Shown one piece after another: positions 24,793 through 47,079 of a stretch of DNA of 64,000 nt. Both the position numbers and the translations under genes were made by a program. The DNA lies in the NCBI RefSeq assembly GCF_030028105.1, contig NC_092375.1, forward strand, positions 44,429,130 through 44,493,129. The letters are read 5' to 3'. A model generated the notes under the pieces. It did no database searches. It was not told the DNA's origin and saw nothing but the letters and a program-made list of their open reading frames with translations. The DNA comes from Mobula birostris (Eukaryota). Within the stretch, counting starts at the first letter, position 1, and each line of letters starts with the position of its first letter.

Positions 24793-25636
24793 TAACACAC
24801 ACAAGATGCTGGAGGAACTCAGCAGGCCAGGCAGCATCTATGGAAAAGAGTATGGTTGGGGTTTCGGGCTGAGACCCTTCATCAGGACTGGAGAAAAAAG
24901 ATGAGGGATAGAGTTAAAAATGGGGGGGGGGAGAAACACAAGGTGGTAGGTGAAACTGGGAGGGGGAGGGGTGATGTAAAGAGCTGGGAAGTTGATTGGT
25001 GAAGGAGACACAGGGCTGGATAAGGGGGAGTGCGAGAGCAGAGGACATGGGAGAAAGTTGGGGAGGTGGGCCGGCAAGGAAATATGGTTGGAGAGGGAAA
25101 AGGGGATGGGGAATGGCGAAAGAGAGGGGGAGCCATTATGGGAAGTTCAAAAAAACAATGTTCATGCCATCTGGTTGGAGGCTACCCAGACGGATTATAA
25201 GGTGTGGTTACTTCAACCTGAGTGTGGCCTCATCACGACAGTGAAGGAGGCCATGGAATGGGAATGGGAATTGGAATTAAAATGGGTAGCACTTTTTCTA
25301 ACGGACGGAGCGTAAGTGCTTGGCAAAAAGGTCTCCCAATCCATGTCAAGTCTCACTGATATACAAGAAACCATACCTGGAGCACCGGACACAGTATATG
25401 ACCCCAACAGATGAAGTGTCACCTCACCTGGAAGGACAGTTTAGAGCCCTGAAAGGTAGTGAGCGAGGAGCTACAAGCCAGGTCTAGCACTTGTCTAGCT
25501 CTTTTCCATAGAAGTCTCATCCCAAAATGTCGACTGTACTCTTTTCCATAGATGCTGCCTGGCCTGCTGAGTTCCTTCAGCATTTTGTGTGTGTTGATTG
25601 GATTTCAAGCATCTGCAGATCTTCTCTTGTTTGTGA
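24793..25636 (-). mobile_element. Non-autonomous Penelope-like (Neptune-type) element with inverted termini and a 12-bp TSD
   Basis: AAGAATTACAAT at 24781-24792 and 25637-25648. Inverted arms: acacacacaagatgctggaggaactcagcaggccaggcagcatctatggaaaagagta and tactcttttccatagatgctgcctggcctgctgagttccttcagcattttgtgtgtgt. Minus-strand GIY-YIG fragments (ATHFNSNSHSHS). Confidence 0.85.
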
Positions 25637-29383: not shown

Positions 29384-30364
29384 CTGTGAGGACAAACAAA
29401 GAGCTGGTCATAGGCAAAACAAAGACGAACACATGTTATTAGTAATTTGCTCATTTTTCTCTCTGGCTCTCTAAGCACTATAACAGTTTCTGCAGCAGGA
29501 TGAAATACTTTTCCACAAACTGAACTGAGACAATTTGCTATTAGCAAGATACTAATCTTCCCTCTATTTCATTTTCACTCTTCACCCACTGAGCTCCAGA
29601 ACTTCAGCAAGTACTCAACATCAAATAAAACTCTTCACCACACATTGATTTGGATCTTCAGATAGCATGGAGAATCAAATTCAAAGCCATGGTACCTCAA
29701 GAACTGTTCTGCATATTCTTCTTCCCCAGCCAATTAAATAATTGCACAACAGACTTTACCTTTGGAGAATTCAGGTTTATTCAGACACAAGATGGACAGT
29801 TTAGAAATTATACTGAACTTTAACCTGATTTTATCCAGCTAGCACAGAAGATGGAAGGAAACATGGCTGATAAACAGAAAACATTTCCCCCATTCCTGCT
29901 TTTAACATTCCCTGGAGTAATTCAGTACTGACAGTGTCTCTGCTTTGCAATATTCATTGAGGTCATCAGTGTGATGTACAACAGGTTTCATATCCAAAAC
30001 ACTGCTGTGTAGTTGCTGTGTTTGCATCTTTATTGTGCAAATGTGCACCAAATTAATAATTAATCAACGTACTCACACATTAACATGCCAAATGTAATGT
30101 TACTCCTGCTGGCAATTTAGAAGTAACTCGTAGATTGCGGGTTCTCAGATTGCATGATAGCAAGTAGCCCTGTGATAAAATTGGTTTCTAGGAACAAATT
30201 ACTGTGTGGAATAGATGCTTAGCAAGTATAGTGTGAGTAGTTCGATACAATAGTTGGTTCCCAGTGACCAACTAATACTATTTTCAAGGGACTAGCATTG
30301 GAAAATTCAGTACCATATGAAGGCCAAGGTAAGATGCTACCAAACAGGGTTTAGACAAAAGAAC

Positions 30365-30563
30365 GTAAACACGAGGAAGCCTGCAGATGCTGGAAATTCA
30401 AGCAACACACACAAAAAAATGCTGGTGAATGCAGCAGGCCAGGCAACATCTATAGGAAGAGGTACAGTCGACATTTCGGGCCAAGACCCTTTGTCAACAA
30501 GGGACCCTCTTCCTATAGATGCTGCCTGGCCTGCTGCACTCACCAGCATTTTTTGTGTGTGTT
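30365..30563. mobile_element. 199-bp hairpin derivative of the Penelope-like terminal repeat, 15-16 bp TSD
   Basis: GTTTAGACAAAAGAAC at 30349-30364 and 30564-30579. Arms: caacacacacaaaaaaatgctggtgaatgcagcaggccaggcaacatctataggaagagg and cctcttcctatagatgctgcctggcctgctgcactcaccagcattttttgtgtgtgttg. Confidence 0.88.
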
Positions 30564-30744
30564 GTTTAGACAAAAGAACATGCCACAATGACAGAGCACA
30601 CAAAGGAAATCATGTCAGTCTGGAGCAGGGCACAGCCTCGTACCTGAGGTAAGTGGGGGAATAGGGTTGGCGCGGTCGGGGGGGGGGCATGAGTAAACAG
30701 ACTCAAGAACAGGGGACCTGATGGATTTGTAGCAGGGAACTCAG

Positions 30745-32925
30745 GGTTGAAGGTAGCAGGGGAGGCATGTGATATAACAAGCCAAAGTCAGCATGGATTC
30801 CCTAAAAGGAAATCTTGCCTGAAAAATCTGTTGGAATTCTTGAGAAATAACAGACAGGAACGTCAGAGGAGAGTCACTGGATGTTGTTTACTTGGATTTC
30901 CAGAAAGACTTTGGAACGGTGCCACACATGAGGCTACTAAACAAGCTAAAAGCCCATGGTATTACAGGAAATATATTAGCATGGACAGCAGATTGGCTGC
31001 CTGTCAGGAGGCAAACAGTGGCAATAATGGGGGCCTTTCCTGGTCAGCTGTCGTTGATTAGTAGTGTTCTGCAGGGTTAGTGCTGATTTCGCCACTTTTC
31101 ACTTTATAGGTTAATGACCTGGATGATGGAAAAAAGATACAAGACAGGTGGAGGGGCAGAAAATCTTGAGGAAATGGAGTCTGCTTGAATAGATTAGGAG
31201 AATGAGCAAAGAAGTGGCAGATGGACTACAGCGCAAGTTAGGGTACGTCCACACTACGCCGGATAATTTTGAAAACGCCGGTTTCGAGTAAAAATGACAG
31301 GCGTCCACACTAAGCGTTTTTCAAAATATCTCCGTCCACATTAGGCGGATGTTTGAGCAAATCTCCTCCTACTGGGCATGCGCAGGACACACAGAAAACA
31401 AGCGAAGCGAAAACGATATACTTCGTGTGCATTTGTCCAGTTACAGAGTAGAAAAACTTAAAAGGAATTGCTCTTGGCTCTCGCACCGGAGGACTTAAAA
31501 CTTAAAAAAAACAAATACTGGAGCGTATGGAGGCAACCGACAGGGAGTTCACTGACAGTATGACCCAGCTGACGACGAACTGAAAAACTAACTCTATTAC
31601 ATTAATAAAGCCCCTTGTTAAATATATAAAGCATCTGCATCAGCGTTATCTTGTATTTCCATACAATGTTACATTAGGCTGTTACACATCTATTGTCAGA
31701 GAAGTACTTGCATAAATAGGTAAACCACCTTCATACAAGCAAGGACAGGAAACAGGGCGAAGTGAGTACACTTATTTATTCAGTAAACTATGGGTCAACT
31801 GGCTTCAGTCTCGCCCGTCTGTTCTGAAATTGTTAGGTGGTGGCGTTCAAGAAAACAACGAACATCTGTTCCAGCATGTCATGACAGCGTTTTTAAAGTC
31901 AAAAAAACTCACTTTACGATTTAACTCTCACGCCGTCACACCGACTGCGCGTTATAACAGCTTGCGCAGTACCAAGCAGAAGCAGAAAAAAGCATTGTTG
32001 TTGTGTTGTTGTCATGACAGCGTTTTAAAATCTCTCCGGTTACCCCGTACACACTTCGCCGGATATTAAGCGTTTTCAGATTTATTCACTCTGGAGAGTG
32101 TTTTCGAAAATCTCCGTTTTCGGGGGCTGAAAACGCCGGCTCAGTGTGGACGGGAGGGCAAAACGAAGAGAAAAAGCTTTGCTTTCAAAATTATCCGGTG
32201 TAATGTGGACGTACCCTTAGTGTACGGTCATGCGCTTTGATGGAATTTGGAGGTGCAAAGGGACTTGGGAGTCCTCGTGCAGGAATCCCTGAAGGTTAAC
32301 TTGCAGGTTGAGTCAATACTAAAGAAGGCAAATGCAATGTTAGTATTCATTTCCAGGGGACTAGAATTTTAAAAAAAGATGTAATGCTGAATCTTTACGA
32401 GGCATTTGTCACACCACAGTTGGAGTGTTGTGAGCAGATTTTGGCTCCATATCTAAGAAATGAGATGGTTTACAACAATGACCCTGGGGTGAAAGGGTTA
32501 ATGCATGGGGAGCATTTGATGACTCAGGGCCTGTACATGCTGGACTTTAAAGGAATGAGGGGATCTCATTCAAACCTACCAAACATTGAAAGGCCTTGAT
32601 AGAATTGTCATGGGAAGGCTGTTTCCAAAATTAGAAGAGTCTAGGACCAAAAGGACATGCTCAGAATAAAACGGCATCCCTTTAGAACAGAGATGAGGAG
32701 GAATTTCTTCAGCTGGAGGGTGGAGAATCTGTGGAATTCATTGCCACAATTGGGTGTGGAGGCCAAGTCACTGGGTGCATTAAAAGTAGAGGTTGATAGG
32801 TTCTTGATTAGTAAGGCATCAAAGGTTACAGGGAGAAGGCAGTAGAATGAGGTTGAGAGGGAAAAGAATTAGCCATGATGGAATAGTAGAGCAGACTCGA
32901 TGGGCTGAATGGCTCTTGGATACTT
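30745..32925 (+). mobile_element. Degraded CR1 LINE (about 30745-31240 and 32217-32925) split by a Harbinger MITE
   Basis: QSQHGFPKRKSCLKNLLEF and DF..TVPHMRLLNKLKAHGI lie to the left of the MITE; RNFFSWRVENLWNSLP and the tail agcagactcgatgggctgaatggc lie to the right. Confidence 0.85.
31241..32216. mobile_element. PIF/Harbinger-type MITE, 976 bp, TTA TSD
   Basis: TIRs GGGTACGTCCACACTACGCCGGATAATTTTGAAA and, as reverse complement, GGGTACGTCCACATTACACCGGATAATTTTGAAA. TTA at 31238-31240 and 32217-32219; no coding capacity. A 3-bp TWA TSD is characteristic of PIF/Harbinger. Confidence 0.88.
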
Positions 32926-32942
32926 GGTGGATCTATATGCAG

Positions 32943-33002
32943 CATGAGTTCCCAACCTGGGGTCCACAGACACCTTGCATAAAACAAAGTTGGGAACCTA
33001 TG
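32943..33002. mobile_element. Tiny hAT-like MITE remnant
   Basis: 14-bp imperfect TIRs catgagttcccaac and gttgggaacctatg; no clean TSD. Confidence 0.4.
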
Positions 33003-35559
33003 ATCTATGGCATCATCCTGCCCTACCTGGACTCTGGCACCTGAGGTACACACTTGGCAGCATGGGTGCCTTGTGGAAAATTGTAAATGAAATATATTTA
33101 TTAAATGATCACCCTATCACTAACCACTCCCCCACCCTTAGTTGGGTTGTCGGGAGGGTCATAGAGGTAAGCTCTGGCAATTGCTCCAGTCATGGGGTTT
33201 GTAGATGTCCACATCCTCAGAACCTTGGGACATTCTTGGCAGGAACTGATTGTTTAAGGGAGAATAAACAAAATAACCAGAAATAGCTGCTCCAAGCATA
33301 GCATGTACTTAAAGTGGATGCTTATCTGACATTTTTTTTAAGAACTTTGCATTACAGAGATGTCCACTTTACGTTATCCACTTTAAACCAGCTGAGTGCT
33401 AACTACATTCCACACTGTTGGACAACACATTGCATACGCTGGCAATTAAAGCAAGAAGCCTGAAACTGCACAGATGACAGTTCCCAGACAAATGGAGTTA
33501 GAGAGCTCTATGTGGCACTTCTGGGCTTTGGAGCAACATGGTGCATCTGCAGTATACATTGATTAATAGACCTGAGTGGCTCAGGCATGCATTAATGGAT
33601 GACGTGTTACGGAACTACTCCGATGTTTATGTGTTCGTCTAGCAAAGGCTTTCTATCATACTCTGAAATCATTCTGAAATGAGGATCAAATATTTCAAAA
33701 TTTTAAAAAAACCTTAAACCCTCTCATGATGACACTGACTGCTCACAATTCCTACCAGTGCATTATTATGGTCATCTAGAATATAGCCCTCTAGGTTTCA
33801 GGCCAATTTAGCACACATTCTCTACATATAAAGTTTAATTTTATGGCTCATTTCATAAACAAGTCTAGTAATCCACAAGGGTTAATAAATTTAGATAAAT
33901 GAACAAGTTACTGATGCTGGCTGGAAAGAACAAAGTGGAGAGGACAAAAAGAAGGAAAATGAGAAAACAAAAGCAGTGTTTCTGTATTTTGATTGCTGTA
34001 TGTGAAAACACTGCAGGGTATATAAAGAAAGGGAGAACAATAGATCTGTTATTTTAAAAAAAATATTTCGGAGTTACAGAACAATGCTGCACATAAATGA
34101 CACAAACTACAAATAGTAACAAAGATATAGTCATACAGAATGACACTGGTACAAAAGGATGAAGATAGAAAGGCTCAGACAGTCACTGGTGAAAACACAA
34201 ACAAAATACATATATGATCATAAACTGAGTTAAACTGTATGCATGGAAATATACTTAGTTTGTGCAGTCTTCCTTTTTCTACAACCACATATATTCTTGT
34301 TAGCTTCCATTTATTTACTATTACGTTTTGTTTGAATAAAATGCATTGCATTCAGCATTTCACTGGATTGTTGCTTTTAGTGATTTTCCTTATCACAATT
34401 ATGGGTCAATTTTGTGAATTAAATGCATGAGATTATGAATGAGCAATGTTGATTGAGGAAACTTCAACAATAATTTCTCAATGCATAGAATCTAGTAAAT
34501 CCCTGCAAGTTCCTAAATTATTGAAACAAAATATAAAAGGATTAATAATCTTTGTGGTACATTTATTAATAGGAAATATGTATTCCTAATTATAACTCCC
34601 TGTTGCTTTGTGAAAATGCAGTAGATTAAATAGGAGATGAAAGAGTTTTTTTTTTAATTTAAGGGGATAACCTGACTTAGGGAAAACATCAGATTCAGTT
34701 GTTGAAATTCAGCAATAGTGAATGCTGCTGGCATTATTTCAATAACAAAGCAAAAGCTGGATCATTATTTTATTATGATCAGTTTTATTTTTTGTGGGCA
34801 ATTATCAAAAATGATGTATGCTCTCCCGGACAATGATTTAGGGTGAGAAGGTGCGCTGTTGTTGAGAAACTGAACATGCATTCTGAGGAAAATGGCTCCA
34901 TTTTACAAAAGCTTTGATGTGTAAATTCTCGACTGCACATCTGCAATTAGTGATTGAGCACTTGACTCCAACGATCATTGGTTGCCTTAGCCAGTAAGTG
35001 GGTGGATATTATGCAATTTCCCAGAGCTTCTTAAAACTGTGTTAATGAAGGTGTTGAGAGGTTTGCTGTTTTATTATGAAAGACAACATAATTTGCATAA
35101 TCACTTCACCCAGAAGCTAAATCAAGCCCCCTGCTTCATTAGTGCTCACAAATGCAGAAAATTATTACCCAAAGTACAGCTTATTTTGAGACTGGACGTC
35201 TTTCTTCTATTCTGGTTTAATAAAGGCCTGGAAACAACCCAAACTTACGAGGAAAGGATTATTGTTGATTTTTTGGTGGTTGCTACAATTTGTAACAGCC
35301 CAACATGCAGCAATCTAATAATGAGGTAATTTACGTATTCAAAATCTAATTATTCTGAATAATTACATCACTTCATGATAGATTGTTAGATTGGTTTTAT
35401 TGCCAAATTTCCATTCACACTTGCACCGATTTCTGTTTTTTTTAATACTAGATGACAACCCAGAAATGAACTCGCCAAGGCCTCCTGCTACGGTCCAGCT
35501 TGTAGAAAAAAAATAGAGGTTTATGGGCTGTGTAGGAGGAAAGGATTAAAATTAATCGT

Positions 35560-36141
35560 AAACATGAGGAATTCTGCAGATGCTGGAAATTCAAGCAACA
35601 CACATCAAAGTTGCTGGTGAACGCAGCAGGCCAGGCAGCATCTCTAGGAAGAGGTACAGTCGATGTTTCAGGCCGAGACAACTCAGGTTGGAGGAACAAC
35701 ACCTTATATTTCGTCTGGGTAGCCTCCAACCTGATGGCAAGAATATTGACTTCTCTAACTTCCACTAATGCCCCACCTCCCCCTCGTATCCCATCCGTTA
35801 TTTATATACACACATTCTTTCTCTCACTCTCCTTTTTCTCCCTCTGTCCCTCTGACTATACCCCTTGCCCATCCTCTGGGTTTCCCCCCTCCCCCTTTTT
35901 CCTTCTCCCTGGGCCTCCTATCCCATGATCCTCTCATATCCCTTTTGCCAATCACCCGTCCAGCTCTTGGCTCCATGCCTCCCCCTCCTGTCTTCTCCTA
36001 TCATTTTGGATCTCCCCCTCCCCTTCCACTTTCAAATCTCTTACTAGCTCTTCCTTCAGTTAGTCCTGACGAAGGGTCCCGGCCTGAAACGTCGACTGTA
36101 CCTCTTCCTAGAGATGCTGCCTGACCTGCTGCATTCACCAG
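35560..36141 (+). mobile_element. 582-bp Penelope-like element (short inverted arm, GIY-YIG C-terminus, pLTR), 10-bp TSD
   Basis: AATTAATCGT at 35550-35559 and 36142-36151. LRLEEQHLIFRLGSLQPDGKNIDFSNFH (ORF 35580-35768). Inserted in a CR1 3' tail. Confidence 0.88.
36061..36098 (+). ncRNA. Minimal type I hammerhead ribozyme in the PLE terminal repeat
   Basis: TAGTC-CTGACGA-AGG(GTCCCGG)CCT-GAAAC-GTC-GACTG: stem I TAGTC/GACTG, CUGANGA box, stem II AGG/CCT, GAAA box and GUC triplet. Predicted cleavage after C36093. Confidence 0.8.
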
Positions 36142-36610
36142 AATTAATCGTGTTGTCAGCACAACATTGTGGGCTAGAGTTCCCCTATTTTGCGGTACTG
36201 TTCTATGTTCTACATTTTACAGCAACAGGCATTTGCTGTAGTTGGGCAACTGTTGGAGTTGGCTTTAAGCTGACCCTTGTCTCTTTAATAACAATGATAT
36301 TCTTCTGCCAATTTTACAGATAATGTCATAACCAGACATCCCACCTCTCCCTGAAGTTCCGGGAGTCTCCCGCATATCGATAGTAGCTCCCTGACGCCCG
36401 GAAATTATATACAATATCCCGGAAATAGATATTTTTTGAGAGGGAAAGCGTGCATCCTGATTGGTCTCTCTTCATGCTCAGATTGGTCCCCAACCACTGG
36501 GCCACGAGGAAACAATATGATTTGGCGATATGAAACAATATGAGTCAGCTGCACTTTTCCTCATTCCCTGTCACGCACTGTTGAATTTTAACGCACGCGA
36601 GGTCATCAGT

Positions 36611-36991
36611 GACCCAAGACGTGCAAAGGAATGGGTCCGTGACCCATTTGTGAATGTCCCTGGTGAATCATCCATGTCAGTGTGGGAAAAAGATCAACTC
36701 CTCGAGCTTGCAAATGACGGTGGGCTGAAAGGTATGTTTGACATAACATCTCTGCCGGCATTCTGGATCAAAGTCAAGGCTGAATATCCTGAGATAGCCA
36801 TGAAAGCACTGAAAACATTGCTTCCATTTCCAACATATTTCTGCGAAGCGGAGTTTTCTGCAATGAATGCAATGAAAACGAAATTGCGGAATAGACTGGA
36901 CATAAAGAACCCCCTTTGAGTATCGCTGTCCCCCATCACCCCTCGATAGGACCGTGTTGTTGCAGGAAAACAAGCCCAGGGCTCCCACTGA
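36611..36991 (+). pseudogene. hAT transposase C-terminal (dimerisation) domain remnant
   Basis: DPRRAKEWVRDPF...LPAFWIKVKAEYPEIAMKALKTLLPFPTYFCEAEFSAM..MKTKLRNRLDIKNPL*VSLSPITPR*DRVVAGKQAQGSH*, with two in-frame stops. Resembles ZBED5/Buster-type hATC domains. Confidence 0.85.
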
Positions 36992-37115
36992 TTCAGCGAT
37001 ACTGGTGTGTTGCAATGATTTTATATGTTCATATGAGGAAAATATGTGCTGTGTTTAATATCCAAACATTACTTAAAATGTTATGATGCTATTGACTTAT
37101 TAGTGACTTATAATT

Positions 37116-37401
37116 CAGTGGTCCCCACCCTCCAGGCCGCGAAGAATACAGCGGTGGCCGGAACACACCCAGCACGTCTTTAAGAAAAAAGCTGAAATAA
37201 ACAAGCTAATTAATTAGGTGCCGCCAGATCAGAGGTGATTGCCGATTGTGTTGCCTCTGATCTGGGCAGACATTTATGTGCTAGGCGGCCCCTAATCAAT
37301 TAGCTTGTTTATTTCAGCTTTTTTCTTAAAGATGTGCTGGGTGCATTCTGGCTACTGTTGTACCACTGCATTCTTCACGGCCCGGAGGTTTGGGACCACT
37401 G
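37116..37401. mobile_element. 286-bp palindromic hAT (Buster-type) MITE, 8-bp TSD
   Basis: TTATAATT at 37108-37115 and 37402-37409 (nnnTAnnn). Termini cagtggtcccc and gggaccactg. Long internal inverted arms (tctttaagaaaaaagctgaaataaacaagctaatt / aattagcttgtttatttcagcttttttcttaaaga). Confidence 0.88.
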
Positions 37402-38664
37402 TTATAATTGACTTACCACTACATTCATGTGAGGAAAACATGCGCTGTGTGTTTGATATTAAATTCGTTAGATAAACCCCTTTAGAAACGAAATTGAGTG
37501 TATTAGCCACTTACAAATGACTTATAGTGGACTTATCACCTATATTCCGGTTGCGTTTAACACCCACCCCTCCCTGGGTCGGCCGGTCTGCAAGAATATT
37601 GTCAATATTAAACTGGTCCGCGGTGCAAAGAAGGTTGGGGACCCCTGATTTAAACTAGCTGGCTAGCTGCCAAGGAGCTACGCTACTGATGTCCTACGTG
37701 ATGAGGCCAAACTCCCTGTAGACTTGCTTAAAATTGTAATAGAATAAACATGATAATATAATACAAGTACATATTTTAATGTCACATTTGCTGCATATAC
37801 CCAACTTGGTTTACAGATTGGTCAAAATCACTAAACAAAGTATTACATACACCCTTGAAGGTCGACGGGGGTGGGGGGGAATATGGGGCTGCGGGGGGCT
37901 GGGGTGCTACTTCTCTGAAATGAGTTTTTGCAGGGTGGGATGTCTGCATAACAAGAGAAATCTTGTTCTCAGGATGAGAGCAAAACAACAATGAACTATG
38001 CATCTTCAATCAAATTAATAGATTGTGATATCACTAAGAAAGTACGAAGGAATCATAAATTAAAGCAAGTAGATTCAAAGCTAAATCAAAGAAAGAGGAA
38101 GAAATAAAAATAAGGAAAAAGGATTTTATATTTGTGAAATCTCTCAATAAAGAATGGGGACTCTTTGCTTACAATAGTTCAATTGTCAATGTTAGGAATT
38201 CTGACTGGTAGTATTTAAAAAGTCATCACATCATTCTGCCTGATTGATGGAATAAGACTTTGAACTTGCTGTGTAAGTTTAATTTGACCTACTGCACAAA
38301 TGCAGCAACTTTATAGTTCTTATACATTTCAACAATGAGCCATTCAGCAAGATGCACTTTCCATGAAACACAGTACAATGCCTTTCGGACACCAACATTT
38401 AGATACTCACACATGCACCTTGCCTGAAGGTGTTGTACCATATGAGCAGAGGAGCAATGGATGCTAGTTGGCTCACCATTATTTTGACAACAAATTATAG
38501 CCTCTAAGACATGTTAGGATTTTTTACTGTGTGTTGAATTAATCTTGTTCAGGCATCATTCTAATTGGAGATCAACTGCCTTTTATTCAATTGTTTATTA
38601 GTTATTTCATCTGGACTGAACTGTTCCAAAGTTGTGACAATTCATGCTTGCTTTTACACTGATA

Positions 38665-38764
38665 TGATAGAAACAAAGAAAACCTACAGCACGAAACAGC
38701 CCTTCGGCCCACAATGCTGTGCCGAACACGTACTTAATTTAGAAATTACCTAGGGTTACCTATA
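38665..38764 (-). mobile_element. CR1 3' tail, continuing at about 40640-40690 after the PLE insertion
   Basis: cagcccttcggcccacaatgctgtgccgaac is the reverse complement of the CR1 3' UTR hairpin region; it continues as gccctttatttttctaagctccatg after the second TSD copy. Confidence 0.7.
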
Positions 38765-38858
38765 CAACAGGAATTCTGCAGATGCTGCAAGTTCAAGCAA
38801 CACACATCAAAGTTGCTGGTGAACGCAGCAGGCCAGGCAGCATCTCTAGGAAATGGTA

Positions 38859-38896
38859 CAGTCGACGTTTCAGGCCGAGACCCTTCGTCAGGACTA
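38859..38896 (-). ncRNA. Minimal type I hammerhead ribozyme, sense to the IGSF3 pre-mRNA
   Basis: The reverse complement reads TAGTCCTGACGAAGGGTCTCGGCCTGAAACGTCGACTG, identical to 40543-40580, with all core nucleotides present. Confidence 0.8.
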
Positions 38897-39931
38897 ACTG
38901 AAGGAAGAGTTAGTAAGAGATTTGAAAGTGGGAGGGAGAGGGGGAGATCCAAAATGATAGGAGAAGACAGGAGGGGGAGGGATGGAGCCAAGAGCTGGAC
39001 GGGTGATTGGCAAAGGGGATATGAGAGGATCATGGGACAGGAGGTCCAGGGAGAAAGACAAAGGGGGGAGGGCACCCAGAGGATGGGCAAGGGGTATAGT
39101 CAGAGGGACAGAGGGAGAAAAAGGAGAGTGAGAGAAAGAATGTGTGTATAGAAATAAATAACGGATGGGGTACAAGGGGGAGCTGGGGCATTAGCGGAAG
39201 TTAGAGAAGTCGATGTTCATGCCATCAGGTTGCAGGCTACCTAGACGGAATATAAGGTGTTGTTCCTCCAGCCCGAGTGTGGCTTCATCTTTACAGTAGA
39301 GGAGGCCGTGGACAGTCATGTCAGAATGGGAATGGGACGTGGAATTAAAATGTGTGGCCACTGGGAGATCCTGCTTTCTCTGGCGGACAGAGCGTAGGCG
39401 AGACCAGACGCAGACTGGGAGACCGCTTTGCTGAAATGCCATTCCCTTCTCGCAATTCCTCCGTCTCCGCTGCAACTGTTCTCAGGATGAGGCTTTTCAT
39501 TCCAGGACGAGGGAGATGTCCTCCTTTTTTAAAGAAAGGGGCTTCCCTTCCTCTACTATCAACTCTGCTCTCAAATGCATCTCCCCCATTTCACGCACAT
39601 CTGCTCTCACTCCATACTCCCGTCACCCCACTAGGAATAGGGTTCCCCTGGTCCTCACCTACCACCCCACCAGCCTCCGGGTCCAACATATTATTCTCCG
39701 TAACTTCCGCCACCTCCAACAGGATCCCACCACTAAGCACCTTTCCCTCCCCCCCTCCCCCCGGCTTTCCACACGGATCACTCCCTACGTGACTCCCTTG
39801 TCCATTCGTCCCCCCCATCCCTCCCCACTGATCTCCCTCCTGGCACTTATCCTTGTAAGCGGAACAAGTACTAAACATGCCCTTACGCTTCCTCCCTTAC
39901 CACCATTCAGGGCCCCAGACAGTTCTTCCAG

Positions 39932-40258
39932 ATGAGGCGACACTTCACCTGTGAGTCGGCTGGGGTGATATACTGCGTCCGATGCTCCCGATGTGGCCTT
40001 CTATATATTGGCGAGATCCAACGCAGACCGGGAGACCGCTTTGCTGAACACCTACGCTCTGTCCGCCAGAGAAAGCAGGATCTCCCAGTGGCCACACATT
40101 TTAATTCCACATCCCATTCCCATTCTGACATGTCTATCCACGGCCTCCTCTACTGTAAAGATGAAGCCACACTCAGGTTGGAGGAACAACACCTTATATT
40201 CCGTCTGGGTAGCCTGCAACCTGATGGCATGAACATCGACTTCTCTAACTTCCACTAA
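39932..40258 (+). pseudogene. PLE GIY-YIG endonuclease domain (5'-truncated, frameshifted ORF)
   Basis: FTCESAGVIYCVRCSRCGLLYIGEIQRRPGDRFAEH...VATHFNSTSHSHSD...RLEEQHLIFRLGSLQPDGMNIDF: VIY...YIG motif plus the PLE CCHH residues. The upstream RT-thumb piece (39516-39750) is in a different frame. Confidence 0.9.
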
Positions 40259-40542
40259 TGCCCCACCTCCCCCTCGTACCCCATCCATTATTTATTTTTA
40301 TACACACATTCTTTCTCTCGCTCTCCTTTTTCTCCCTCTGTCCCTCTGACTATACCCCTTGCCCATCCTCTGGGATCCCCCCCTTGTCTTTCTCCCCGGA
40401 CCTCCTGTCCCATGATCTTCTCATATCCCCTTTGCCAATCACCTGTCCAGCTCTTGGCTCCATCCCTCCCCCTCCTGTCTTCTCCTATCATTTTGGGTCT
40501 CCCCCTCCCCCTCTCAAATCTCTTACTAACTCTTCCTTCAGT

Positions 40543-40580
40543 TAGTCCTGACGAAGGGTCTCGGCCTGAAACGTCGACTG
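40543..40580 (+). ncRNA. Minimal type I hammerhead ribozyme in the 3' pLTR
   Basis: TAGTC-CTGACGA-AGG(GTCTCGG)CCT-GAAAC-GTC-GACTG; predicted cleavage after C40575. Confidence 0.8.
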
Positions 40581-41629
40581 TACCTCTTCCTGGAGATGCT
40601 GCCTGGCCTGCTGCATTCACCAGCAACTTTGATGTGTTGCTAGGGTTACCTATAGCCCTTTATTTTTCTAAGCTCCATGATATAAAAGTCTTTTTCAGCA
40701 TTAGAAGCTGTGTCAAAATAAGTTGATTTTCATGATCTCTCAGTGCTGCCCTTTTATGAAGTGGGCCAGGCATTCAGAGGCAGACACATCATGAATAGTC
40801 TCCCTGGGTCTCAGCTGCTGAGTGACTCTGTAATGAAATACTAACAAAACTTGTAGTTGACTGGTTTTGAAATTCCAATAATCAGCTCCAAGAAATTTAA
40901 AACATCAATATGGCTTTCCAGTAGCTGTGATCAAACAAGTAACTTTTAATCAATTGATCTCTGTACTTGAAGAAAAGTTTGCCTCTGTAATTCTCTGCAG
41001 GTGACTCTCTACACCTTCTCATTACTGCATTAATTTGTCTTTCTGTATCTGGTGTCATTGCACAGCCTGTTATCAGACATTACATAATCTACAATCTATA
41101 AACTTTTCTGATTTGTGCTTACTAATTAACTTTCAGAAAAACAATACACAGCTGACTTGCAACTGAGTCCAAAAGGACATGAAGTAACCTGAAGCATTTT
41201 TACACTGAAATTGTGCATTTTAGTTAAGCAAAGTTAATTGTATATTTTGAAGAGTTAAAGTTGGTATCTCAAAATATAACAAGAAGCCACAAAGCTCTAA
41301 GATTTTGAATGGTAGGATGATAATGAGACTTACATAATTAGGTCTCTAAATGAGACAAGGTGCAAGTCTACCTGAAAGATTAGCAGGAATCAGGAGTATC
41401 AGCAGCAGAATTTCTTTTCTCTCTTTCAAATTATACTAATCAAAATTGTGGAAGATCAATCAGCAAACTGCAGATACTCTATGTTTCTTTCTCTTTTGGT
41501 ACTCTGATTTTACTCCCAATCCACTCTTTGACCAATTGATAGCCATTTCTCATTCCAGAGTTGTTTCAGTCCCCATACGAAAAATCAGAAGACTGCGGGA
41601 GGACGTACTGGAGAATTCCTCCTTTAATT

Positions 41630-41850
41630 GGTGATTGTTTCATTATTACCACGTGCTGAGGTATAGTGAAAATCTTTGTTTTGCATGCTGTCTTTACAGA
41701 AAATTTCACTAGAATAGTATATTAAAGTAGGACACTGGAAAGGAATAACGTAAAACAAAGTAGTGTACCTTCACAGAGGAGGTGCATGTAGGCAGACAAT
41801 AAGGTGATGAGATACAAAGCCATGAGGTAGACTGTAAGGTCAGGAATCCT
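41630..41850 (-). mobile_element. LINE 3' tail remnant (Rex1-like)
   Basis: cattattaccacgtgctgaggtatagtgaaaatctttgttttgcatgctg...gcagacaataaggtg resembles the reverse complement of a common Rex1-type 3' UTR. Confidence 0.45.
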
Positions 41851-43169
41851 AATTGTCAACCAGTCAACACAATGAGTGGCAATGTAATATTGAACAGAAA
41901 GGTGTCGACTTGATCCTGTAGCAGCAGCAACAGCCTTAAAATTGGCTCAGATATTCACAAGATAGGAATGTGAAAAACCAGTCCCGGAGCCAGTTTAACT
42001 TTGACAGTTACAAGAGTAAATAGTACAACAATCATTGTCGAGGCTCACATGTGTTAGGTGTTACTTGGCCTGTCTTTGAAACTGAAGCACAAATAAATTT
42101 CTACAATACAAAAATTACAATGAAACTTTTTAAAAAGTAAAATAAAGTTTTAAGCATCCCACAAATGCACAGGGGGAGTTACTAATGCAATTACGTTGCA
42201 CTAGTCAGGTTTGAAATCAGATGTAATACCAATGTTAGAAACAAGTTGCACTGTGTCACAGAATCCTGTTGTATTATGTGTGAAAATGACTATAATTAAT
42301 TTGATAGAAAACAATTACAACTTTAGTAAATGAAAGAAAGAACCAACAGTGAAAAATGGTATTTTTCAATATCGCTTTGGGAAGATATTAAGTTAATTGG
42401 ATTCTCTTCTGTGAAGTCTTTGGAGATTAATTCTAAAAGAAAGGTCAACAGACAGTACCTGCCACAAACTGCAGCAATTTGTACAGTGAAGGTAGGAGCA
42501 AGATTTTGTTCCACAATGAGAGAGATAACTGCACAATAATTGTATTCAGCATTCTGTTTAACATAACAGCTATCATTTTCTTGGTTAGGTATCAAGGAAA
42601 CTTGATCTTGGGTCAGATAAAAATTAAAAATGTAATATTAATGGATTTATGAATAATTTGTTAGACATGAAAATATAATTTTTATTAATTCAGATTCTAA
42701 ACAATTTTATATTAATTCACAAGAAAAAATGGTAGGAACTATGGGCACGTTAGGAGTAGCTATCAAGAGAGATCGCATGGGTGAAATCAAAGATGTGAAT
42801 GTATAAAACGGTAGTTGCAATGATCAAGGAGCTCAATAGCTGCGGGTGGAGCGCAGCGAAAAATGGTCAATATCAAGACTGATAAATGGTGAAAGGGATT
42901 ATTTGCCTGTTACAAACCAGCCCATTTTTATTCCTACTGTCCTGGTTGGTTCCTAGATCCACGCATCTTATTCACTTTTACAGATTTTACACCCTTCCCT
43001 CTCCATTGGTTTAACAGTCAGCTTTTTTCATTTTCACACATTTTTCGTATACGTCTTTTATTTCTTCATTGTTTGATCTCCACTTAACCATTTCAGGAAT
43101 CGTTTCATTTCTTCTCATGTTTATTTGCTTGTATTTCACCTCCCTATTACCTCTTATTTTGTCTTTTCT

Positions 43170-43572
43170 GGCGAGTTGCTTGCTATGTCTCCCCTCTTGT
43201 GAAACGGGGACCCCTCTTTCTCCCTTATTAGGGAGAGAGACAGAGAGAGCCTGTGGTATGTCGAATACCGGGTGAACGAGTAGTCTTTGGGGTACTGCAA
43301 GTCTGTGACTTTGTTGATGCTTTGCTGCACACTTGAGTGCTCCGTGGGGGGTGCCAATGTTTATTTTCTGCTGGTGGGGGAGGGGGCATTGTTGCTTTGC
43401 TGCTGTTTACATGTGGGAGGGGGAGCTGGGGAGGGCTTTGGCGTTCTAACACTTAACTGTCATTCATTCTTTGGGCACACTCTTCTGTTTTCGTGGATGG
43501 CTGCAAAGAAGAAGTATTTCAGGATGTCTATTGCATATGTTCACCAACATTACATGTACCTTTGAAACTTTT
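43170..43572 (+). mobile_element. Non-autonomous retroposon with a Rex1-like 3' tail
   Basis: Ends gaagaagtatttcaggatgtctattgcatatg...atgtacctttgaaactttt, the same tail type as 27470-27510 and 63110-63186. No ORF. Confidence 0.5.
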
Positions 43573-43923
43573 GAATCCAGATTTGAAGGGAAGACTTCAC
43601 TGTAATGCTGCCAAGAGGTCCCAGCAGTTCCTGGGAACTGGCTCATGCCCCATGAATGGAGAAGCAGTTATTTGGGTCAAGAATCTAAAGATCCCATTGC
43701 GCAATCAACCTGATTCAATCTCACAAGACTGCCAAAGATTTTTAGGAATACATGGACCAGTGAAGATGGTACTTTCCAGAAAGCCTTCAGTAAGGTGTAG
43801 TTCTCAGCATTTCAAGGTATTTCTGGAGTTTTCAAGGTAGGTGCGCAGTAAGGAAGTGTAAGATGAGCACAAACACCTCTTCCTGTCTAATGTGCAGATT
43901 AAAACTGGGTCTGTTCCTAGTTT

Positions 43924-44210
43924 GTGTGGCGTGTGGACAAGTGGTTAAGGCATTGGTCTAGTGATCTGAAGGTTGTTAGCTTGAGCCTCAGCTGAGGAAG
44001 CTGTTGTGTCCTTGAGCAAGGCACTTAACCACACATTGCTCTGTGGCGACACCAGTGCCAAGCTGTATGGGTTCTAGCCCTTCCCTTGGACAACATCAGT
44101 CGCACAGAGAGGGGAGACTTGCAGCATGGGCAACTGCTGATCTTCCATACAACCTTGCCCAGGTCTCAAGTCATCATCGAAAATCGATGAACAGCCGAAG
44201 AGAGAAAGAG
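43924..44210 (+). mobile_element. tRNA-derived SINE with a CORE/Meta-like central domain
   Basis: A-box-like gtggcgtgtggacaagtggttaagg, a degenerate B-box, central tgtgtccttgagcaaggcacttaacc and a purine-repeat tail (gaagagagaaagag). Confidence 0.7.
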
Positions 44211-44479
44211 TTCCTAGCTTTAGACATGGACAGGGCCTGAGGATGAATTTGAGAGAACAAAAATCAGCTTTCAGGATTCTTTCATCTTTGTCACTACCTT
44301 CCTTGAATACATAAAGAGAAACATTCACGTGCACAAACCTGGGCGCAGAGTATTATTTCTTCAGGGCTAACAGGAGAAAGGTAGGAGAGTGGGGTTATTT
44401 AGGATGGTTGTTTCAAAAACCCAGATTAGGCACGATGAGTTAAGCAGTACCCTGAATTTTTAGGACTCCATGACGATCA

Positions 44480-45180
44480 ACCCCTAATTGGAAGAACGGA
44501 GAGATCTTGGAATACAGATCCGTAATTCCTTGGAAGTGGTGTCCTGGGTAAGATGGTGCTGTAAGGAATGCTCTTGGCACAATGGCCTTCATAATCAATG
44601 TGATGAGTGCAGGAGTTTGTATGTTACTTGGAAATTGTATAAGATGTTGGTGAGGCCTAATTTGGAATATTGTGTGTAGTTTTGCTCACCTGTCTATAGG
44701 AAAGATGTAAATAAGATTGAAAGAGTACAGAGAAAATTTAAAAGGGTGTTACCTGGACTTGAGGACCTGAGTTATAGGGAAAGGCTGGATAGCTTAGGAA
44801 TTTATTCCCTAGAACATAAAAATTGAGGGGAGATTTGTAGAAGGTATGCAAAAACATGAAGAATATAGATTGGGTAACTGTAAGCAGGTTTTTTCCACTG
44901 AAGTTGGGTGACACTAGAACTAGGGATCATGGGTTAAGGATGAAAGGTGAAAAATTTAAGGGGAACTTCTTCACTCAGAGGGTGGTGAGTATGTAGAATG
45001 AATTGGTGGATGCAGGTTCGATTTCAATACTTTAGAGAAATTTGTATAGGTACATGGACGGGAGGGGCATGGAGGGATATGATCCGGGTGCATATCGATA
45101 GAACTAGGCAGACTAATGGTCAGCATGGAGCTGATGGGCTGAAGGGTCTGTTTCTGTGCTGTTGTGGTCTATCACTCTAT
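44480..45180 (+). mobile_element. Degraded CR1 LINE 3' portion
   Basis: RDLGIQIRNSLEV...LYKMLVRPNLEYCV (ORF 44488-44679) and the tail gatgggctgaagggtctgtttctgtgctg. Confidence 0.8.
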
Positions 45181-46194
45181 CATTAAGTATCAGCAAGGGA
45201 CATTAGGAAAGGCAGCACAAACCAGTGGACACAAATCTAAAAATTACACAGGAACTGGGAGATCAAAGGTCTTGTGTGCATTATTACACGTTGTACAGTA
45301 TGCGAAGGGGCAAATTGACAAAGTGTTTCAGAGACAGTATGTATTCTGGGCTTTACAGAGAGAGGCATGCAGTGTGAGAGCCAGGAAGACATGATGAACC
45401 TTCATAGAACACCGATTCACCCCAATTAGAGCATGTGTCCAGTTCTGTGTGGGAAAGATATTTCGAAGGAGAAAGGAGTTAGTAGTTGATTCTGGGGATA
45501 ACTTTAGATACACTGTTAAATGAGAGAAGCTGGGGTCGTTAGTTTTCAAACAGAGAAATGGATCTGATAAAGATATTTGAAATTATGAAAGATCTAGGCA
45601 AACCAAAGGAGAGAAATCATTCCTCTTGTGCAAGGAAATAATGTCTGGTGAGGCACTATGAATGGCTCAAAGTTGAACATTCATTGCTCCTGACACACAG
45701 AGACTATACTTACTGCTGAGATGCAACCTCAAGAATATTACTGGTCATAAGCAAGAGTCAATTCTTCTCACAATAATCTGAATAAAGTCAACTCTCATCT
45801 CAAGGGACAGTGACATTTCAGATGAGATGATGGAGATGGAAAGAAGGAGAAAGAGATATAATGTTTAAATTATGGATTGAGTGACAGGGAGTTCGACCAT
45901 GACTGATAGCATTGAAATTCATAATGTCCTTCAAAGCTGATAAGAAGCTTCACCAATGTAGCATGAAGAGGGAGACAAGGGGCACTTAGCTGATGTAACA
46001 AAACGATCTGTGAACTGAACCATGATGACAATATGACAGAATTATGTTTTGAGGCAAACTGTACTTTTTGTCTAAAAGTAAACGCAGGTTTACAAAATAT
46101 CAACAATCATAGTGTGAGGGCTCAGTAGTTTACCCAATGAGTCATGCTGAGTTAGTTGGTCAGAAGCAGTGTTGAGGTGAGAATTCTGCCTGAT

Positions 46195-46450
46195 ATCGCT
46201 GGCTTAATTCGTCTCGACTTCTAATTCAAAACGCTGTGGAGTCAAGGCTGATATTGTGGTGCTGTAGTGAGGGAGTCAAAGTCATTGTCAGAGTACTATC
46301 AAGGAAGAGTAGGTCAATTATTTCCAGTGCTCTGGCCAGTGTTATCGGTCAATCACTGAAAATAAACCAAACAAACATTGCCGCTTGCAGGTTTGCTGGT
46401 TGAAAATTGACTACCGTGGTTTCAACCTTAAAAATGATGACAGTTCAAAA
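46195..46450 (+). mobile_element. Second degenerate Deu-domain SINE
   Basis: aggctgatattgtggtgctgtagtgagggagt...gaagagtagg...tctggccagt, plus the L2-type tail aaattgactaccgtggtttc...cagttcaaaa. Confidence 0.5.
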
Positions 46451-47079
46451 ACGCATCAGCATCCAGATTCTACTGAAATCAACGTTCAAAATAAATATAT
46501 TATCAAAGTACATACATGTCAGCATATACAGTACGACCTCAATACATCTTCTTGCAGTCTTTCACAGAAAAACAATGAACTGCAATAGAATCAATAAAAG
46601 GACTAAGGCTGACCAACAACCAATGTGCACCTGGTATGTTTGGGAAAATATGATCGTGCAACACTTAATTGTGTCCCTGGGCAAGACACCTAGAGCCTGT
46701 GAACTATCTCAGTAATTGCTAATTCTCAGAGAAAGAAGGCTGTTAAAATGACAATAAAACCTAAAATGTCTTTTGTTAAATATGATGCATTCAGTGAAAA
46801 CATGTATGTGAAATGTAACTGGAGCACAATGCAGAGCTCTGTGGTATTAAAAGCTTACAATTATTAGCAGAAAATGTACAGCCTAAAGGATTGGTCACAT
46901 TAGACAATCCAAATATCCTTAGCTGCAGAATGTTAGTAAGACAGGAGATAGATGATTTAGAAAGTTGAATAGCCCATACTGCACAACAAATAGACAGGGT
47001 GCCTGAAAGACGAGACTGCAAACATATTCTATGCTTACTAAGTAGTTCTGTAAATGAATAAGGCAGCCAAGGCACTTAC

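What the first reader, a model, noticed from the sequence alone, without database searches (positions are those of the whole stretch)
38859..38896. Intact hammerhead ribozyme in the sense of the IGSF3 pre-mRNA (intron between Ig5 and Ig6)
Seen: the minus strand reads UAGUC-CUGACGA-AGG(GUCUCGG)CCU-GAAAC-GUC-GACUG, with all core nucleotides, stem I and stem II. Helix III is reduced to the palindromic ACGU with no loop. Known: Penelope-like elements carry such minimal type I hammerheads, which are thought to cleave mainly as dimers. Inference: IGSF3 is transcribed on the minus strand, so each pre-mRNA would carry this potential self-cleavage site in a 17.7-kb intron. It could act co-transcriptionally, or be neutralised by lacking a partner or by pairing with the inverted arm.
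Basis: partly seen in the sequence, partly recalled or inferred. Interest (0 to 1): 0.7.

Follow-up and report, generated by a model that had tools for sequence, protein, structure and literature searches.

The report
Penelope retrotransposon hammerhead in an intron
The 38-base hammerhead motif is real, but it is the standard minimal ribozyme carried in the tail of a Penelope-like retrotransposon that landed in an intron, and it is predicted to be locked in a long RNA duplex with its own mirror copy, so it is an ordinary passenger, not a regulator of the host gene.

Summary
Observation confirmed. The minus strand at 38896..38859 carries every hammerhead core nucleotide, a 5-bp helix I, a 3-4-bp helix II, and a loopless palindromic ACGU in place of helix III. 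It lies in sense in a 17,696-nt GT-AG intron (47079..29384) of a minus-strand EWI-type Ig gene.

What it is: the minimal type I hammerhead of a Penelope-like element (PLE) tail. It sits about 290 nt downstream of a GIY-YIG endonuclease reading frame. It belongs to the inverted, 5'-truncated arm of one fold-back insertion (38765-40639) flanked by a 15-bp target-site duplication. The window holds four such insertions, each with its own duplication and a roughly 33-nt "tail" at one end only, which are published PLE hallmarks. Earlier notes on this genome mention hammerheads 117 times.

Likely behaviour: inert in the host pre-mRNA.
- Helix III cannot close in a monomer.
- The predicted monomer and dimer folds are competing hairpins or duplexes that bury the core.
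- In the intron RNA, all 38 nt pair with the antisense twin at 40543-40580 inside a duplex of about 600 bp, and that twin is transcribed first.
- Published PLE hammerheads cleave poorly, only as dimers or with the element's protein.

Rfam models give no hit. This is a new copy of a known kind, of low interest.

The parts
38859..38896 (-). Minimal type I hammerhead motif (the finding). The predicted cleavage site is between 38864 and 38863.
   Evidence: Sequence read; descriptor hit; exact pattern hit.
38765..39398 (-). Inverted, 5'-truncated arm of the PLE insertion. It comprises the C-terminal part of the GIY-YIG reading frame (39194-39398), the 3' UTR, the hammerhead, a conserved 3' block, and a tail of about 33 nt (38765-38797).
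   Evidence: The arm is 94.5% identical to 40051-40637 in inverted orientation. The tail is seen in the alignment. The end is set by the target-site duplication.
39397..39435 (+). A 39-nt piece at the inversion junction. It is a direct duplicate of the GIY-YIG-coding stretch 40010-40048.
   Evidence: (repeat D6).
39436..40639 (+). Main (plus-strand) arm of the same insertion. It is a 5'-truncated PLE 3' end with no tail.
39932..40258 (+). GIY-YIG endonuclease reading frame (108 aa) of the PLE. A C-x2-C-x2-C motif lies between the GIY and YIG motifs.
   Evidence: Translation. Pfam GIY-YIG scores E=0.0028 for this copy. Of 21 aligned family members, 10 hit GIY-YIG, with a best E of 3e-6. Atlas GIY-YIG clusters score 0.95. 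Homologues are found in stingray genomes.
40543..40580 (+). Twin hammerhead motif, identical over 38 nt. It is antisense in the host pre-mRNA and is the predicted pairing partner of the finding.
38750..38764 (.). Left copy of the 15-bp target-site duplication, CTAGGGTTACCTATA.
40640..40654 (.). Right copy of the 15-bp target-site duplication.
29384..47079 (-). Host intron (17,696 nt, GT-AG, phase 1) between two V-set Ig exons of an EWI-type Ig gene.
35560..36141 (.). A second fold-back PLE insertion with a 10-bp target-site duplication. It carries an intact hammerhead at 36061-36098 (+) with one loop change. Its short minus arm (35560-35679) begins inside helix II and carries the tail.
30365..30563 (.). 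A third fold-back PLE mini-insertion (199 bp, 16-bp target-site duplication). Its hammerhead is truncated and decayed at CpG sites.
24793..25636 (.). A fourth, older fold-back PLE insertion (12-bp target-site duplication, about 71% identical). Its sense-strand hammerhead at 24858-24885 (-) is decayed: GUC has become CCC and helix I is lost.

Best explanation
The motif is the minimal, helix-III-less type I hammerhead that Penelope-like retrotransposons (PLEs) carry in their terminal non-coding region. One retrotransposition event inserted a fold-back unit at 38765-40639. That unit consists of a 5'-truncated PLE 3' end on the plus strand and, joined head to head, a shorter inverted copy on the minus strand. 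The finding is the hammerhead of the inverted arm, which happens to be sense to the host Ig gene. In the PLE life cycle such hammerheads are thought to process tandem element transcripts as dimers, possibly helped by the element's protein. In the host intron the motif is a passenger. It cannot form helix III alone, its best predicted folds bury the catalytic core, and its perfect complement is transcribed about 1.7 kb earlier in the same RNA. It is therefore expected to be zipped into a duplex of about 600 bp and to leave the pre-mRNA uncut. Shown here: the sequence, the element architecture, the intron and strand, and the predicted folds. Inferred: the lack of cleavage in vivo.
For: The motif and its copies are shown.

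PLE identity rests on several observations:
- A GIY-YIG reading frame lies about 290 nt upstream of the twin motif.
- The insertion has an inverted 5'-truncated arm.
- A 15-bp target-site duplication brackets both arms, so they arrived in one event.
- Three further fold-back insertions have their own duplications of 10, 12 and 16 bp.
- A tail of about 33 nt is present at only one end of each insertion.
The inverted 5'-truncated copy, the one-sided tail and the hammerhead are the features described for PLEs in PMC8557442 and PMC4209133; target-site duplications are a general mark of retrotransposition.

Evidence for inertness:
- The monomer MFE of -11.0 kcal/mol pairs G5-G8 with C15.2-C17 (pair probabilities 0.98-0.99). 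The hammerhead-like fold scores only -5.6 to -7.0.
- The dimer MFE is an extended duplex at -30.3, against -10.9 to -11.5 for the double hammerhead.
- In the minus-strand RNA 40720..38700, all 38 nt pair with 40543-40580, and 575 of 597 arm nucleotides are in the duplex.

Literature: single minimal hammerheads showed no detectable cleavage, and dimers showed low cleavage (PMC4209133). The anole PLE hammerhead cleaved only with the element's protein, and no RNA-seq ends were found at the cleavage site (PMC11167929).

Abundance: 117 earlier notes on this genome mention hammerheads. About 43% of the copies of related HHR-bearing, PLE-derived elements (non-LTR retrozymes) in Xenopus overlap introns (bioRxiv 10.64898/2026.07.22.740005).
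Against: Nearest-neighbour folding ignores tertiary contacts, proteins and co-transcriptional kinetics, so a small cleaved fraction cannot be excluded. The 38 nt, including 8 CpG-context positions, are unchanged between the two arms, where 2.76 changes were expected (P = 0.046). This could hint at constraint. It is a single marginal comparison, and gene conversion between the arms would produce the same result. No PLE reverse-transcriptase domain is present in this truncated copy or elsewhere in the window, so the PLE assignment rests on the endonuclease, the architecture and the hammerhead.
Confidence: 0.85

Rival explanations
1. The motif is a working ribozyme in the host transcript. It pairs in trans with another sense copy, either an abundant PLE transcript or another intronic copy, or it is assisted by PLE protein. 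It then cleaves a fraction of nascent pre-mRNA inside the 17.7-kb intron and lowers expression of the gene.
For: The core, both stems and the palindromic ACGU needed for a double hammerhead are all intact. The subfamily is young, with arms 3.9% diverged and 6% divergence from the 36066 copy, so family transcripts and protein may still exist. PLE hammerheads do cleave as dimers or with protein in vitro (PMC4209133, PMC11167929). Retrozymes are under-represented in introns in Xenopus (bioRxiv 10.64898/2026.07.22.740005), which fits some cost of genic insertion.
Against: The antisense twin in the same RNA is predicted to sequester every nucleotide of the motif. The double-hammerhead fold is about 19 kcal/mol worse than the extended duplex. 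The only other full-length sense-strand motif in the window, at 24858, has lost GUC and helix I, and the two short sense-strand arms (30365-30496, 35560-35679) are cut off at or inside the motif. Reported in vitro rates are very low, and no cleavage ends were seen in anole RNA-seq (PMC11167929).
Confidence: 0.06
2. The motif is a domesticated intronic hammerhead, like the amniote HH9/HH10 ribozymes in RECK, CTCL and DTNB, kept by selection to regulate processing of this gene's mRNA.
For: It lies in an intron in sense orientation with an intact core. The marginal lack of change in the 38 nt between arms would also fit.
Against: It is part of a recognisable insertion with an intact target-site duplication, and identical copies sit in the antisense arm and in another insertion. 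It lacks a cis helix III and matches no Rfam hammerhead model. The domesticated examples are stable monomeric ribozymes conserved at orthologous sites (PMC6155905).
Confidence: 0.02
3. The feature relevant to the host is not the ribozyme but the perfect inverted repeat of about 600 bp. As intronic double-stranded RNA it could be edited by ADAR-type enzymes or processed into small RNAs, and the hammerhead is irrelevant.
For: The arms are 94.5% identical over about 597 nt and 652 nt apart. The predicted duplex has an energy of about -1200 kcal/mol, with 575 of 597 nt paired.
Against: No data here show editing or small RNAs. Such intronic inverted repeats are common and usually have no consequence. 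This reading is compatible with the best explanation and does not compete with it.
Confidence: 0.07

Closest known systems
Minimal hammerheads (min-HHR) of metazoan Penelope-like elements (Cervera & De la Pena 2014, PMC4209133; Lunse et al. 2017, as cited in PMC6765202)
   Same: It is type I and has all the core boxes. Helix III is absent, and positions 15.2-16.2 are palindromic (ACGU). Helix I is short (5 bp). An unpaired nucleotide follows A9 in the parse that fits the family. It sits in the terminal non-coding region of a GIY-YIG-encoding PLE. It occurs mostly as single motifs in truncated copies, sometimes as pairs on opposite strands 100-700 bp apart. It is expected to be active only as a dimer.
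   Different: The usually conserved G10.1-C11.1 pair is G.U (or A-U) in this young subfamily. Older copies in the window keep CCC, which gives G-C. Helix II has only 3-4 bp, against 7-8 bp in the Schistosoma families. Activity was not tested.
PLE insertion architecture: pseudo-LTRs, an inverted 5'-truncated copy, and a 30-40-bp tail (Craig et al. 2021, PMC8557442; Frangieh et al. 2024, PMC11167929)
   Same: An inverted 5'-truncated copy abuts the 5' end of the main copy. A tail of about 33 nt is present at one end only. Target-site duplications are present. All four insertions in the window show these features.
   Different: All four insertions are heavily 5'-truncated (0.2-1.9 kb). None has a reverse-transcriptase domain or a tandem pseudo-LTR. 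The junction of this insertion also carries a 39-nt direct duplicate of an internal segment.
Conserved intronic hammerheads of amniotes (HH9/HH10 in RECK, CTCL, DTNB; PMC6155905)
   Same: It is a type I hammerhead lying in sense in an intron of a protein-coding gene, probably derived from retroelements.
   Different: Those have a cis helix III and loop-loop contacts, cleave efficiently as monomers, are conserved at orthologous positions, and match Rfam models. This one has none of these properties as far as could be tested.
Animal non-LTR retrozymes (PMC7229834; bioRxiv 10.64898/2026.07.22.740005)
   Same: They carry type I hammerheads related to PLE terminal regions and are common in non-mammalian vertebrates, including introns.
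   Different: Retrozymes are non-coding tandem units that yield circular RNAs. This copy is continuous with PLE endonuclease-coding sequence and is a fold-back, not a tandem.

Membership tests
Hammerhead ribozyme, minimal type I (PLE min-HHR) | Catalytic boxes C3-U4-G5-A6-N7-G8-A9 and G12-A13-A14 | tested here: met
   CUGACGA and GAA are at the right spacing.
Hammerhead ribozyme, minimal type I (PLE min-HHR) | A15.1, U16.1 and a non-G nucleotide at 17 (cleavage triplet GUC) | tested here: met
   GAAAC-GUC is present, and the predicted cleavage is after C at 38864.
Hammerhead ribozyme, minimal type I (PLE min-HHR) | Helix III absent or loopless, with palindromic 15.2-16.2, so that it can form only between two copies | tested here: met
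   ACGU has no loop. A nested double-hammerhead structure can be written and evaluates at -10.9 to -11.5 kcal/mol.
Hammerhead ribozyme, minimal type I (PLE min-HHR) | Helix I (4-6 bp, open end) and helix II | tested here: met
   Helix I is UAGUC/GACUG, 5 bp including one G.U. Helix II is AGG/CCU (3 bp), or a bulged A followed by GGGU/GCCU (4 bp, two of them wobbles).
Hammerhead ribozyme, minimal type I (PLE min-HHR) | Highly conserved G10.1-C11.1 pair, with an unpaired nucleotide after A9 (PMC4209133) | tested here: not met
   Position 11.1 is U in the three young copies, giving G.U or A-U. The bulged A is present. Copies at 24858 and 30401 keep CCC, which allows G-C.
Hammerhead ribozyme, minimal type I (PLE min-HHR) | Match to a curated hammerhead covariance model (Rfam) | tested here: not met
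   There is no hit at gathering score or at E<=10. I read this as due to the missing helix III; that reading was not tested.
Hammerhead ribozyme, minimal type I (PLE min-HHR) | Mg2+-dependent self-cleavage | not testable with these tools
   This needs in vitro transcription of monomer and dimer constructs.
Penelope-like element (endonuclease-bearing, Neptune/Poseidon type) | C-terminal GIY-YIG endonuclease with a Cys motif | tested here: met
   The frame at 39932-40258 scores Pfam GIY-YIG E=0.0028, below the curated cutoff. Of 21 aligned family members, 10 hit GIY-YIG, best E 3e-6. Atlas GIY-YIG clusters score 0.95. C-x2-C-x2-C lies between GIY and YIG.
Penelope-like element (endonuclease-bearing, Neptune/Poseidon type) | Telomerase-like reverse transcriptase upstream of the endonuclease | tested here: inconclusive
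   The copy is 5'-truncated at about 39436, downstream of where the reverse transcriptase would lie. No PLE reverse transcriptase was seen in the window; the only such fragment, at 51585-52403, looks like a LINE.
Penelope-like element (endonuclease-bearing, Neptune/Poseidon type) | Inverted 5'-truncated copy adjoining the 5' end, and a 30-40-bp tail at one end only | tested here: met
   Both features are seen in all four insertions in the window, as described in PMC8557442.
Penelope-like element (endonuclease-bearing, Neptune/Poseidon type) | Hammerhead motif in the terminal non-coding region | tested here: met
   The motif begins 285 nt after the endonuclease stop codon, and its predicted cleavage site lies 64 nt (twin, plus arm) to 66 nt (this arm) before the shared 3' end.
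Domesticated intronic hammerhead (HH9/HH10 type) | Stable cis helix III and monomeric activity; match to the Rfam HH9/HH10 models | tested here: not met
   There is no helix III loop and no Rfam hit.
Domesticated intronic hammerhead (HH9/HH10 type) | Conservation at the orthologous intron across species | not testable with these tools
   No related vertebrate genomes are available. Two metagenome scans returned nothing relevant.

The most novel reading that the evidence does not exclude
The intact, sense-oriented minimal hammerhead is cleaved in vivo at a low rate. This could happen through a trans double hammerhead with abundant transcripts of the same young PLE subfamily, or with help from PLE protein. 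Retrotransposon tails would then act as scattered co-transcriptional cleavage sites that tax expression of host genes such as this Ig gene, and sense intronic copies would be under purifying selection.
Probability: 0.04. Interest if true: 0.55.

Novelty: new member of a known kind. Interest (0 to 1): 0.14.

Why it matters
If the motif did cut the pre-mRNA, thousands of retrotransposon tails in this genome would be potential co-transcriptional cleavage sites inside genes. That would be a real cost of Penelope-like elements to the host and a possible source of new regulation. The evidence here points the other way: this copy is a standard, probably silent passenger. The practical value is as a calibration point. 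In this genome, a complete hammerhead core in an intron should be read first as a PLE tail. The window also gives four clean examples of PLE fold-back insertions, each with a target-site duplication and a one-sided tail.

Tried and rejected
- Rfam: no hammerhead hit at gathering score on the whole window, at E<=10 on 1.2 kb, or on 66 nt. The only weak hit, IS009 at E=3.9, is chance.
- Cross-species copies for covariation: a metagenome scan with the hammerhead pattern found nothing. A scan with the invariant 20-mer downstream block returned 27 loci, all GC-rich sequences unrelated to the element, most likely bacterial, with no hammerhead upstream. Covariation could not be tested.
- Contigs encoding related GIY-YIG proteins: the stingray contig could not be read. 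A TARA scaffold holds only a truncated endonuclease fragment that ends before any hammerhead would appear. A third protein was not on record.
- A profile search of the endonuclease family against the PDB gave only a meaningless hit at E=0.77.
- Test for constraint on the motif since insertion: 0 changes between arms against 2.76 expected, P=0.046. I judged this too weak, and it is confounded by possible gene conversion.
- Chance occurrence is rejected: 3 descriptor hits against 0.035 expected.
- A retrozyme or SINE reading is rejected for this copy, because it is continuous with endonuclease-coding sequence.
- The Lunse et al. 2017 paper is not held, so it is cited only through PMC6765202.

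Full report
**Observation.** Read on the minus strand, 38896..38859 is UAGUC-CUGACGA-AGG-GUCUCGG-CCU-GAAAC-GUC-GACUG. This holds the two hammerhead core boxes (C3-A9 and G12-A14), A15.1, U16.1 and C17, and a 5-bp helix I that includes one G.U pair. It also holds a short helix II and, in place of helix III, the palindrome ACGU with no loop. Cleavage would fall between 38864 and 38863.

A structural descriptor of my own finds three hits in the window: this one, 40543-40580 (+) and 36061-36098 (+). It requires the core boxes, a helix II of at least 3 bp, a helix I of at least 4 bp, and up to 10 nt between A15.1 and U16.1. About 0.035 hits are expected per random 64 kb. A looser pattern adds a decayed copy at 24858-24885 (-), giving 4 hits against 0.22 expected. 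The hits are copies of one repeat, so they show that the motif is real and repeated. They do not show that it arose several times.

Rfam gives no hammerhead hit at gathering score, nor at E<=10 on 1.2 kb or on 66 nt. I read this as due to the missing helix III; that reading was not tested.

**Host gene and intron.** Six V-set Ig exons lie on the minus strand at about 60212, 54451, 47515, 29435, 26512 and 19464. Most carry the Glu-Trp-Ile/Leu motif of the EWI subfamily. The nearest Atlas clusters to one exon carry the Ig_IgSF3 family. IGSF3 is therefore plausible, but I did not test it further. The intron around the finding runs from the donor CCAG|GTAAGT (47080|47079) to the acceptor CACAG|AT (29384|29383) in phase 1, which makes 17,696 nt.

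**What the motif belongs to.** The plus-strand twin at 40543-40580 begins 285 nt downstream of the stop codon of a 108-aa reading frame (39932-40258). That frame reads ...VIYCVRCSRCGLLYIGE..R..DRFAEH.... Its evidence for being a GIY-YIG endonuclease is:
- It hits Pfam GIY-YIG weakly, at E=0.0028.
- Of 21 aligned family members, 10 hit GIY-YIG, with a best E of 3e-6.
- The Atlas places it at 0.95 among eukaryotic GIY-YIG clusters. The structural neighbours of the top hit (not of the query itself) include clusters with reverse-transcriptase domains.
- Its sequence relatives are mostly unnamed eukaryotic predictions, plus proteins of the stingrays Hypanus sabinus and Hemitrygon akajei.

A BLAST of 39436-40660 against the window, the repeat finder and an alignment of all tails show the layout. 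The finding sits in an inverted, 5'-truncated arm (38765-39398, 94.5% identical to 40051-40637). This arm is joined head to head to the longer plus arm (39436-40639). The 15-bp sequence CTAGGGTTACCTATA flanks the pair at 38750-38764 and 40640-40654, so both arms came from one insertion event.

Three more insertions in the window have the same fold-back layout and their own duplications:
- 35560-36141, with a 10-bp duplication
- 30365-30563, with a 16-bp duplication
- 24793-25636, with a 12-bp duplication; this is an older subfamily, about 71% identical

In each of the four insertions, exactly one arm ends in an extra tail of about 33 nt (CTTGAA.TT.CAGCATCTGCAG..TTCCT...).

Craig et al. (PMC8557442) describe three of these features as characteristic of Penelope-like elements: an inverted 5'-truncated copy next to the 5' end, a 30-40-bp tail at one end only, and a hammerhead in the terminal repeat region. 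Frangieh et al. (PMC11167929) trace the tail to two adjacent internal start sites of reverse transcription, and they show cleavage and extension of both DNA strands. No reverse-transcriptase domain is present, because every copy here is truncated.

**Comparison with the published minimal hammerhead.** Cervera and De la Pena (PMC4209133) defined this class. It has the core boxes only, no helix III, palindromic 15.2-16.2, a short helix I, an unpaired nucleotide after A9, and a conserved G10.1-C11.1 pair. It is found in the terminal repeats of all PLEs, and in thousands of mostly solitary copies in fish, coelacanth, frog and reptile genomes, sometimes as pairs on opposite strands.

The present motif fits this description except at 10.1-11.1. 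This is a small subfamily variant whose effect is unknown.

**How it is likely to behave in the pre-mRNA.**

First, a loopless ACGU cannot close on itself. The essential A15.1-U16.1 pair needs a second copy. In that double hammerhead, helix I also forms between the two strands, and each core cuts the other strand.

Second, nearest-neighbour folding disfavours the active fold:
- The isolated 38-mer prefers a hairpin in which G5-A6-C7-G8 pair with C15.2-G16.2-U16.1-C17. Its energy is -11.0 kcal/mol with pair probabilities of 0.98-0.99, against -5.6 to -7.0 for the hammerhead-like fold.
- Two copies prefer an extended duplex at -30.3, against -10.9 to -11.5 for the double hammerhead.

Third, in the minus-strand RNA 40720..38700, the minimum-energy structure pairs all 38 nucleotides with the antisense twin at 40543-40580. 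Of the 597 arm nucleotides, 575 are in the duplex, and the two arms alone cofold at about -1200 kcal/mol. Transcription runs from high to low coordinates, so the antisense arm is made first. The hammerhead lies about 500 nt into the sense arm, so the duplex should already be zipping when the motif emerges. This last step is inference.

Fourth, the only other full-length sense-strand motif in the window, at 24858, has lost GUC and helix I. The two short sense-strand arms (30365-30496 and 35560-35679) are cut off at or inside the motif.

Fifth, published assays agree with inertness. Single minimal hammerheads gave no detectable cleavage, and dimers gave low cleavage (PMC4209133; review PMC6765202). 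The anole PLE hammerhead cleaved only in the presence of the element's protein, and no RNA-seq reads ended at its site (PMC11167929).

**Points on the other side.** Folding programs ignore tertiary contacts, proteins and kinetics. The two arms differ at 3.9% of sites overall, at 25% of CpG-context columns and at 2.5% of other columns. The motif, with 8 CpG-context positions, is nonetheless unchanged, where 2.76 changes were expected (P=0.046). This is one marginal comparison, and gene conversion between the arms would produce the same result.

Earlier first-stage notes on this genome mention hammerheads 117 times. They include fold-back mini-elements with their own duplications, and an unverified report of two more sense hammerheads in the same gene about 52 kb beyond the window. 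That report could not be checked here. At most it offers distant partners.

**Comparison with known intronic hammerheads.** The amniote HH9/HH10 ribozymes (RECK, CTCL, DTNB) are also type I, intronic and in sense. However, they have a stable cis helix III and are conserved at orthologous sites (PMC6155905). This copy is a recognisable insertion with an intact target-site duplication and identical sister copies, so domestication is unlikely. In Xenopus, about 43% of the copies of related HHR-bearing, PLE-derived elements (non-LTR retrozymes) overlap introns (bioRxiv 10.64898/2026.07.22.740005), so an intronic sense copy is not remarkable in itself.

**Verdict.** This is a new copy of a known kind. 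I put about 0.85 on "inert passenger", about 0.06 on low-level cleavage in vivo, and about 0.02 on domestication. The duplex formed by the two arms may matter more to the host than the ribozyme does. Interest is low.

Noticed in passing
window 24793-25636, 30365-30563, 35560-36141, 38765-40639: All four PLE insertions in the window are head-to-head fold-backs with their 3' ends pointing outwards. Each is flanked by its own target-site duplication (12, 16, 10 and 15 bp) and carries the roughly 33-nt tail on exactly one arm. They make a compact set of examples of reverse transcription primed from both DNA strands.
   Followed up: yes
window 35679, 30496, 25514, 30506 (5' ends of the arms at these junctions): The 5' truncation points of four arms (the short arm of two insertions and both arms of the 199-bp one) cluster at the hammerhead. 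Three begin within CUGANGA or helix II, at element positions of about 40549-40558. One begins about 8 nt after the cleavage site. This may reflect a reverse-transcriptase stop or a template switch at the structured motif. With n=4 it is only anecdotal. Earlier notes on this genome describe elements of 110-130 bp 'headed by' a hammerhead.
   Followed up: partly
window 39397-39435: At the inversion junction, a 39-nt plus-strand piece duplicates 40010-40048 of the main arm. That is the segment just upstream of the point (40051) where the inverted arm stops. This suggests a template switch between the two nascent cDNAs or RNAs of one insertion complex.
   Followed up: partly
window 38821-38844 and the matching positions in all 8 tails: The block AGATG.TGCCTG.CCTGCTG, 15-40 nt downstream of the hammerhead, is better conserved between old and young subfamilies than the hammerhead itself. 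It has 18 invariant columns across 8 copies that are only about 71% alike elsewhere. It is a candidate recognition or initiation element for the PLE reverse transcriptase. RNAalifold predicts only a small stem (UGCUG/CAGCA) next to it, with no covariation.
   Followed up: partly
window 51585-52403 (-): A 273-aa open frame holds the C-terminal part of a reverse transcriptase (RVT_1 E=8e-5, plus the LINE-associated ALKBH8_N region at E=5e-11). It looks like a LINE fragment in another intron of the same gene.
   Followed up: partly
window 37147-37225 / 37284-37362 and ORF 36530-36919 (+): A 79-nt inverted repeat (89% complementary, 58 nt apart) lies next to a 129-aa open frame with no Pfam match. 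This is possibly another mobile-element remnant between the two PLE insertions.
   Followed up: no
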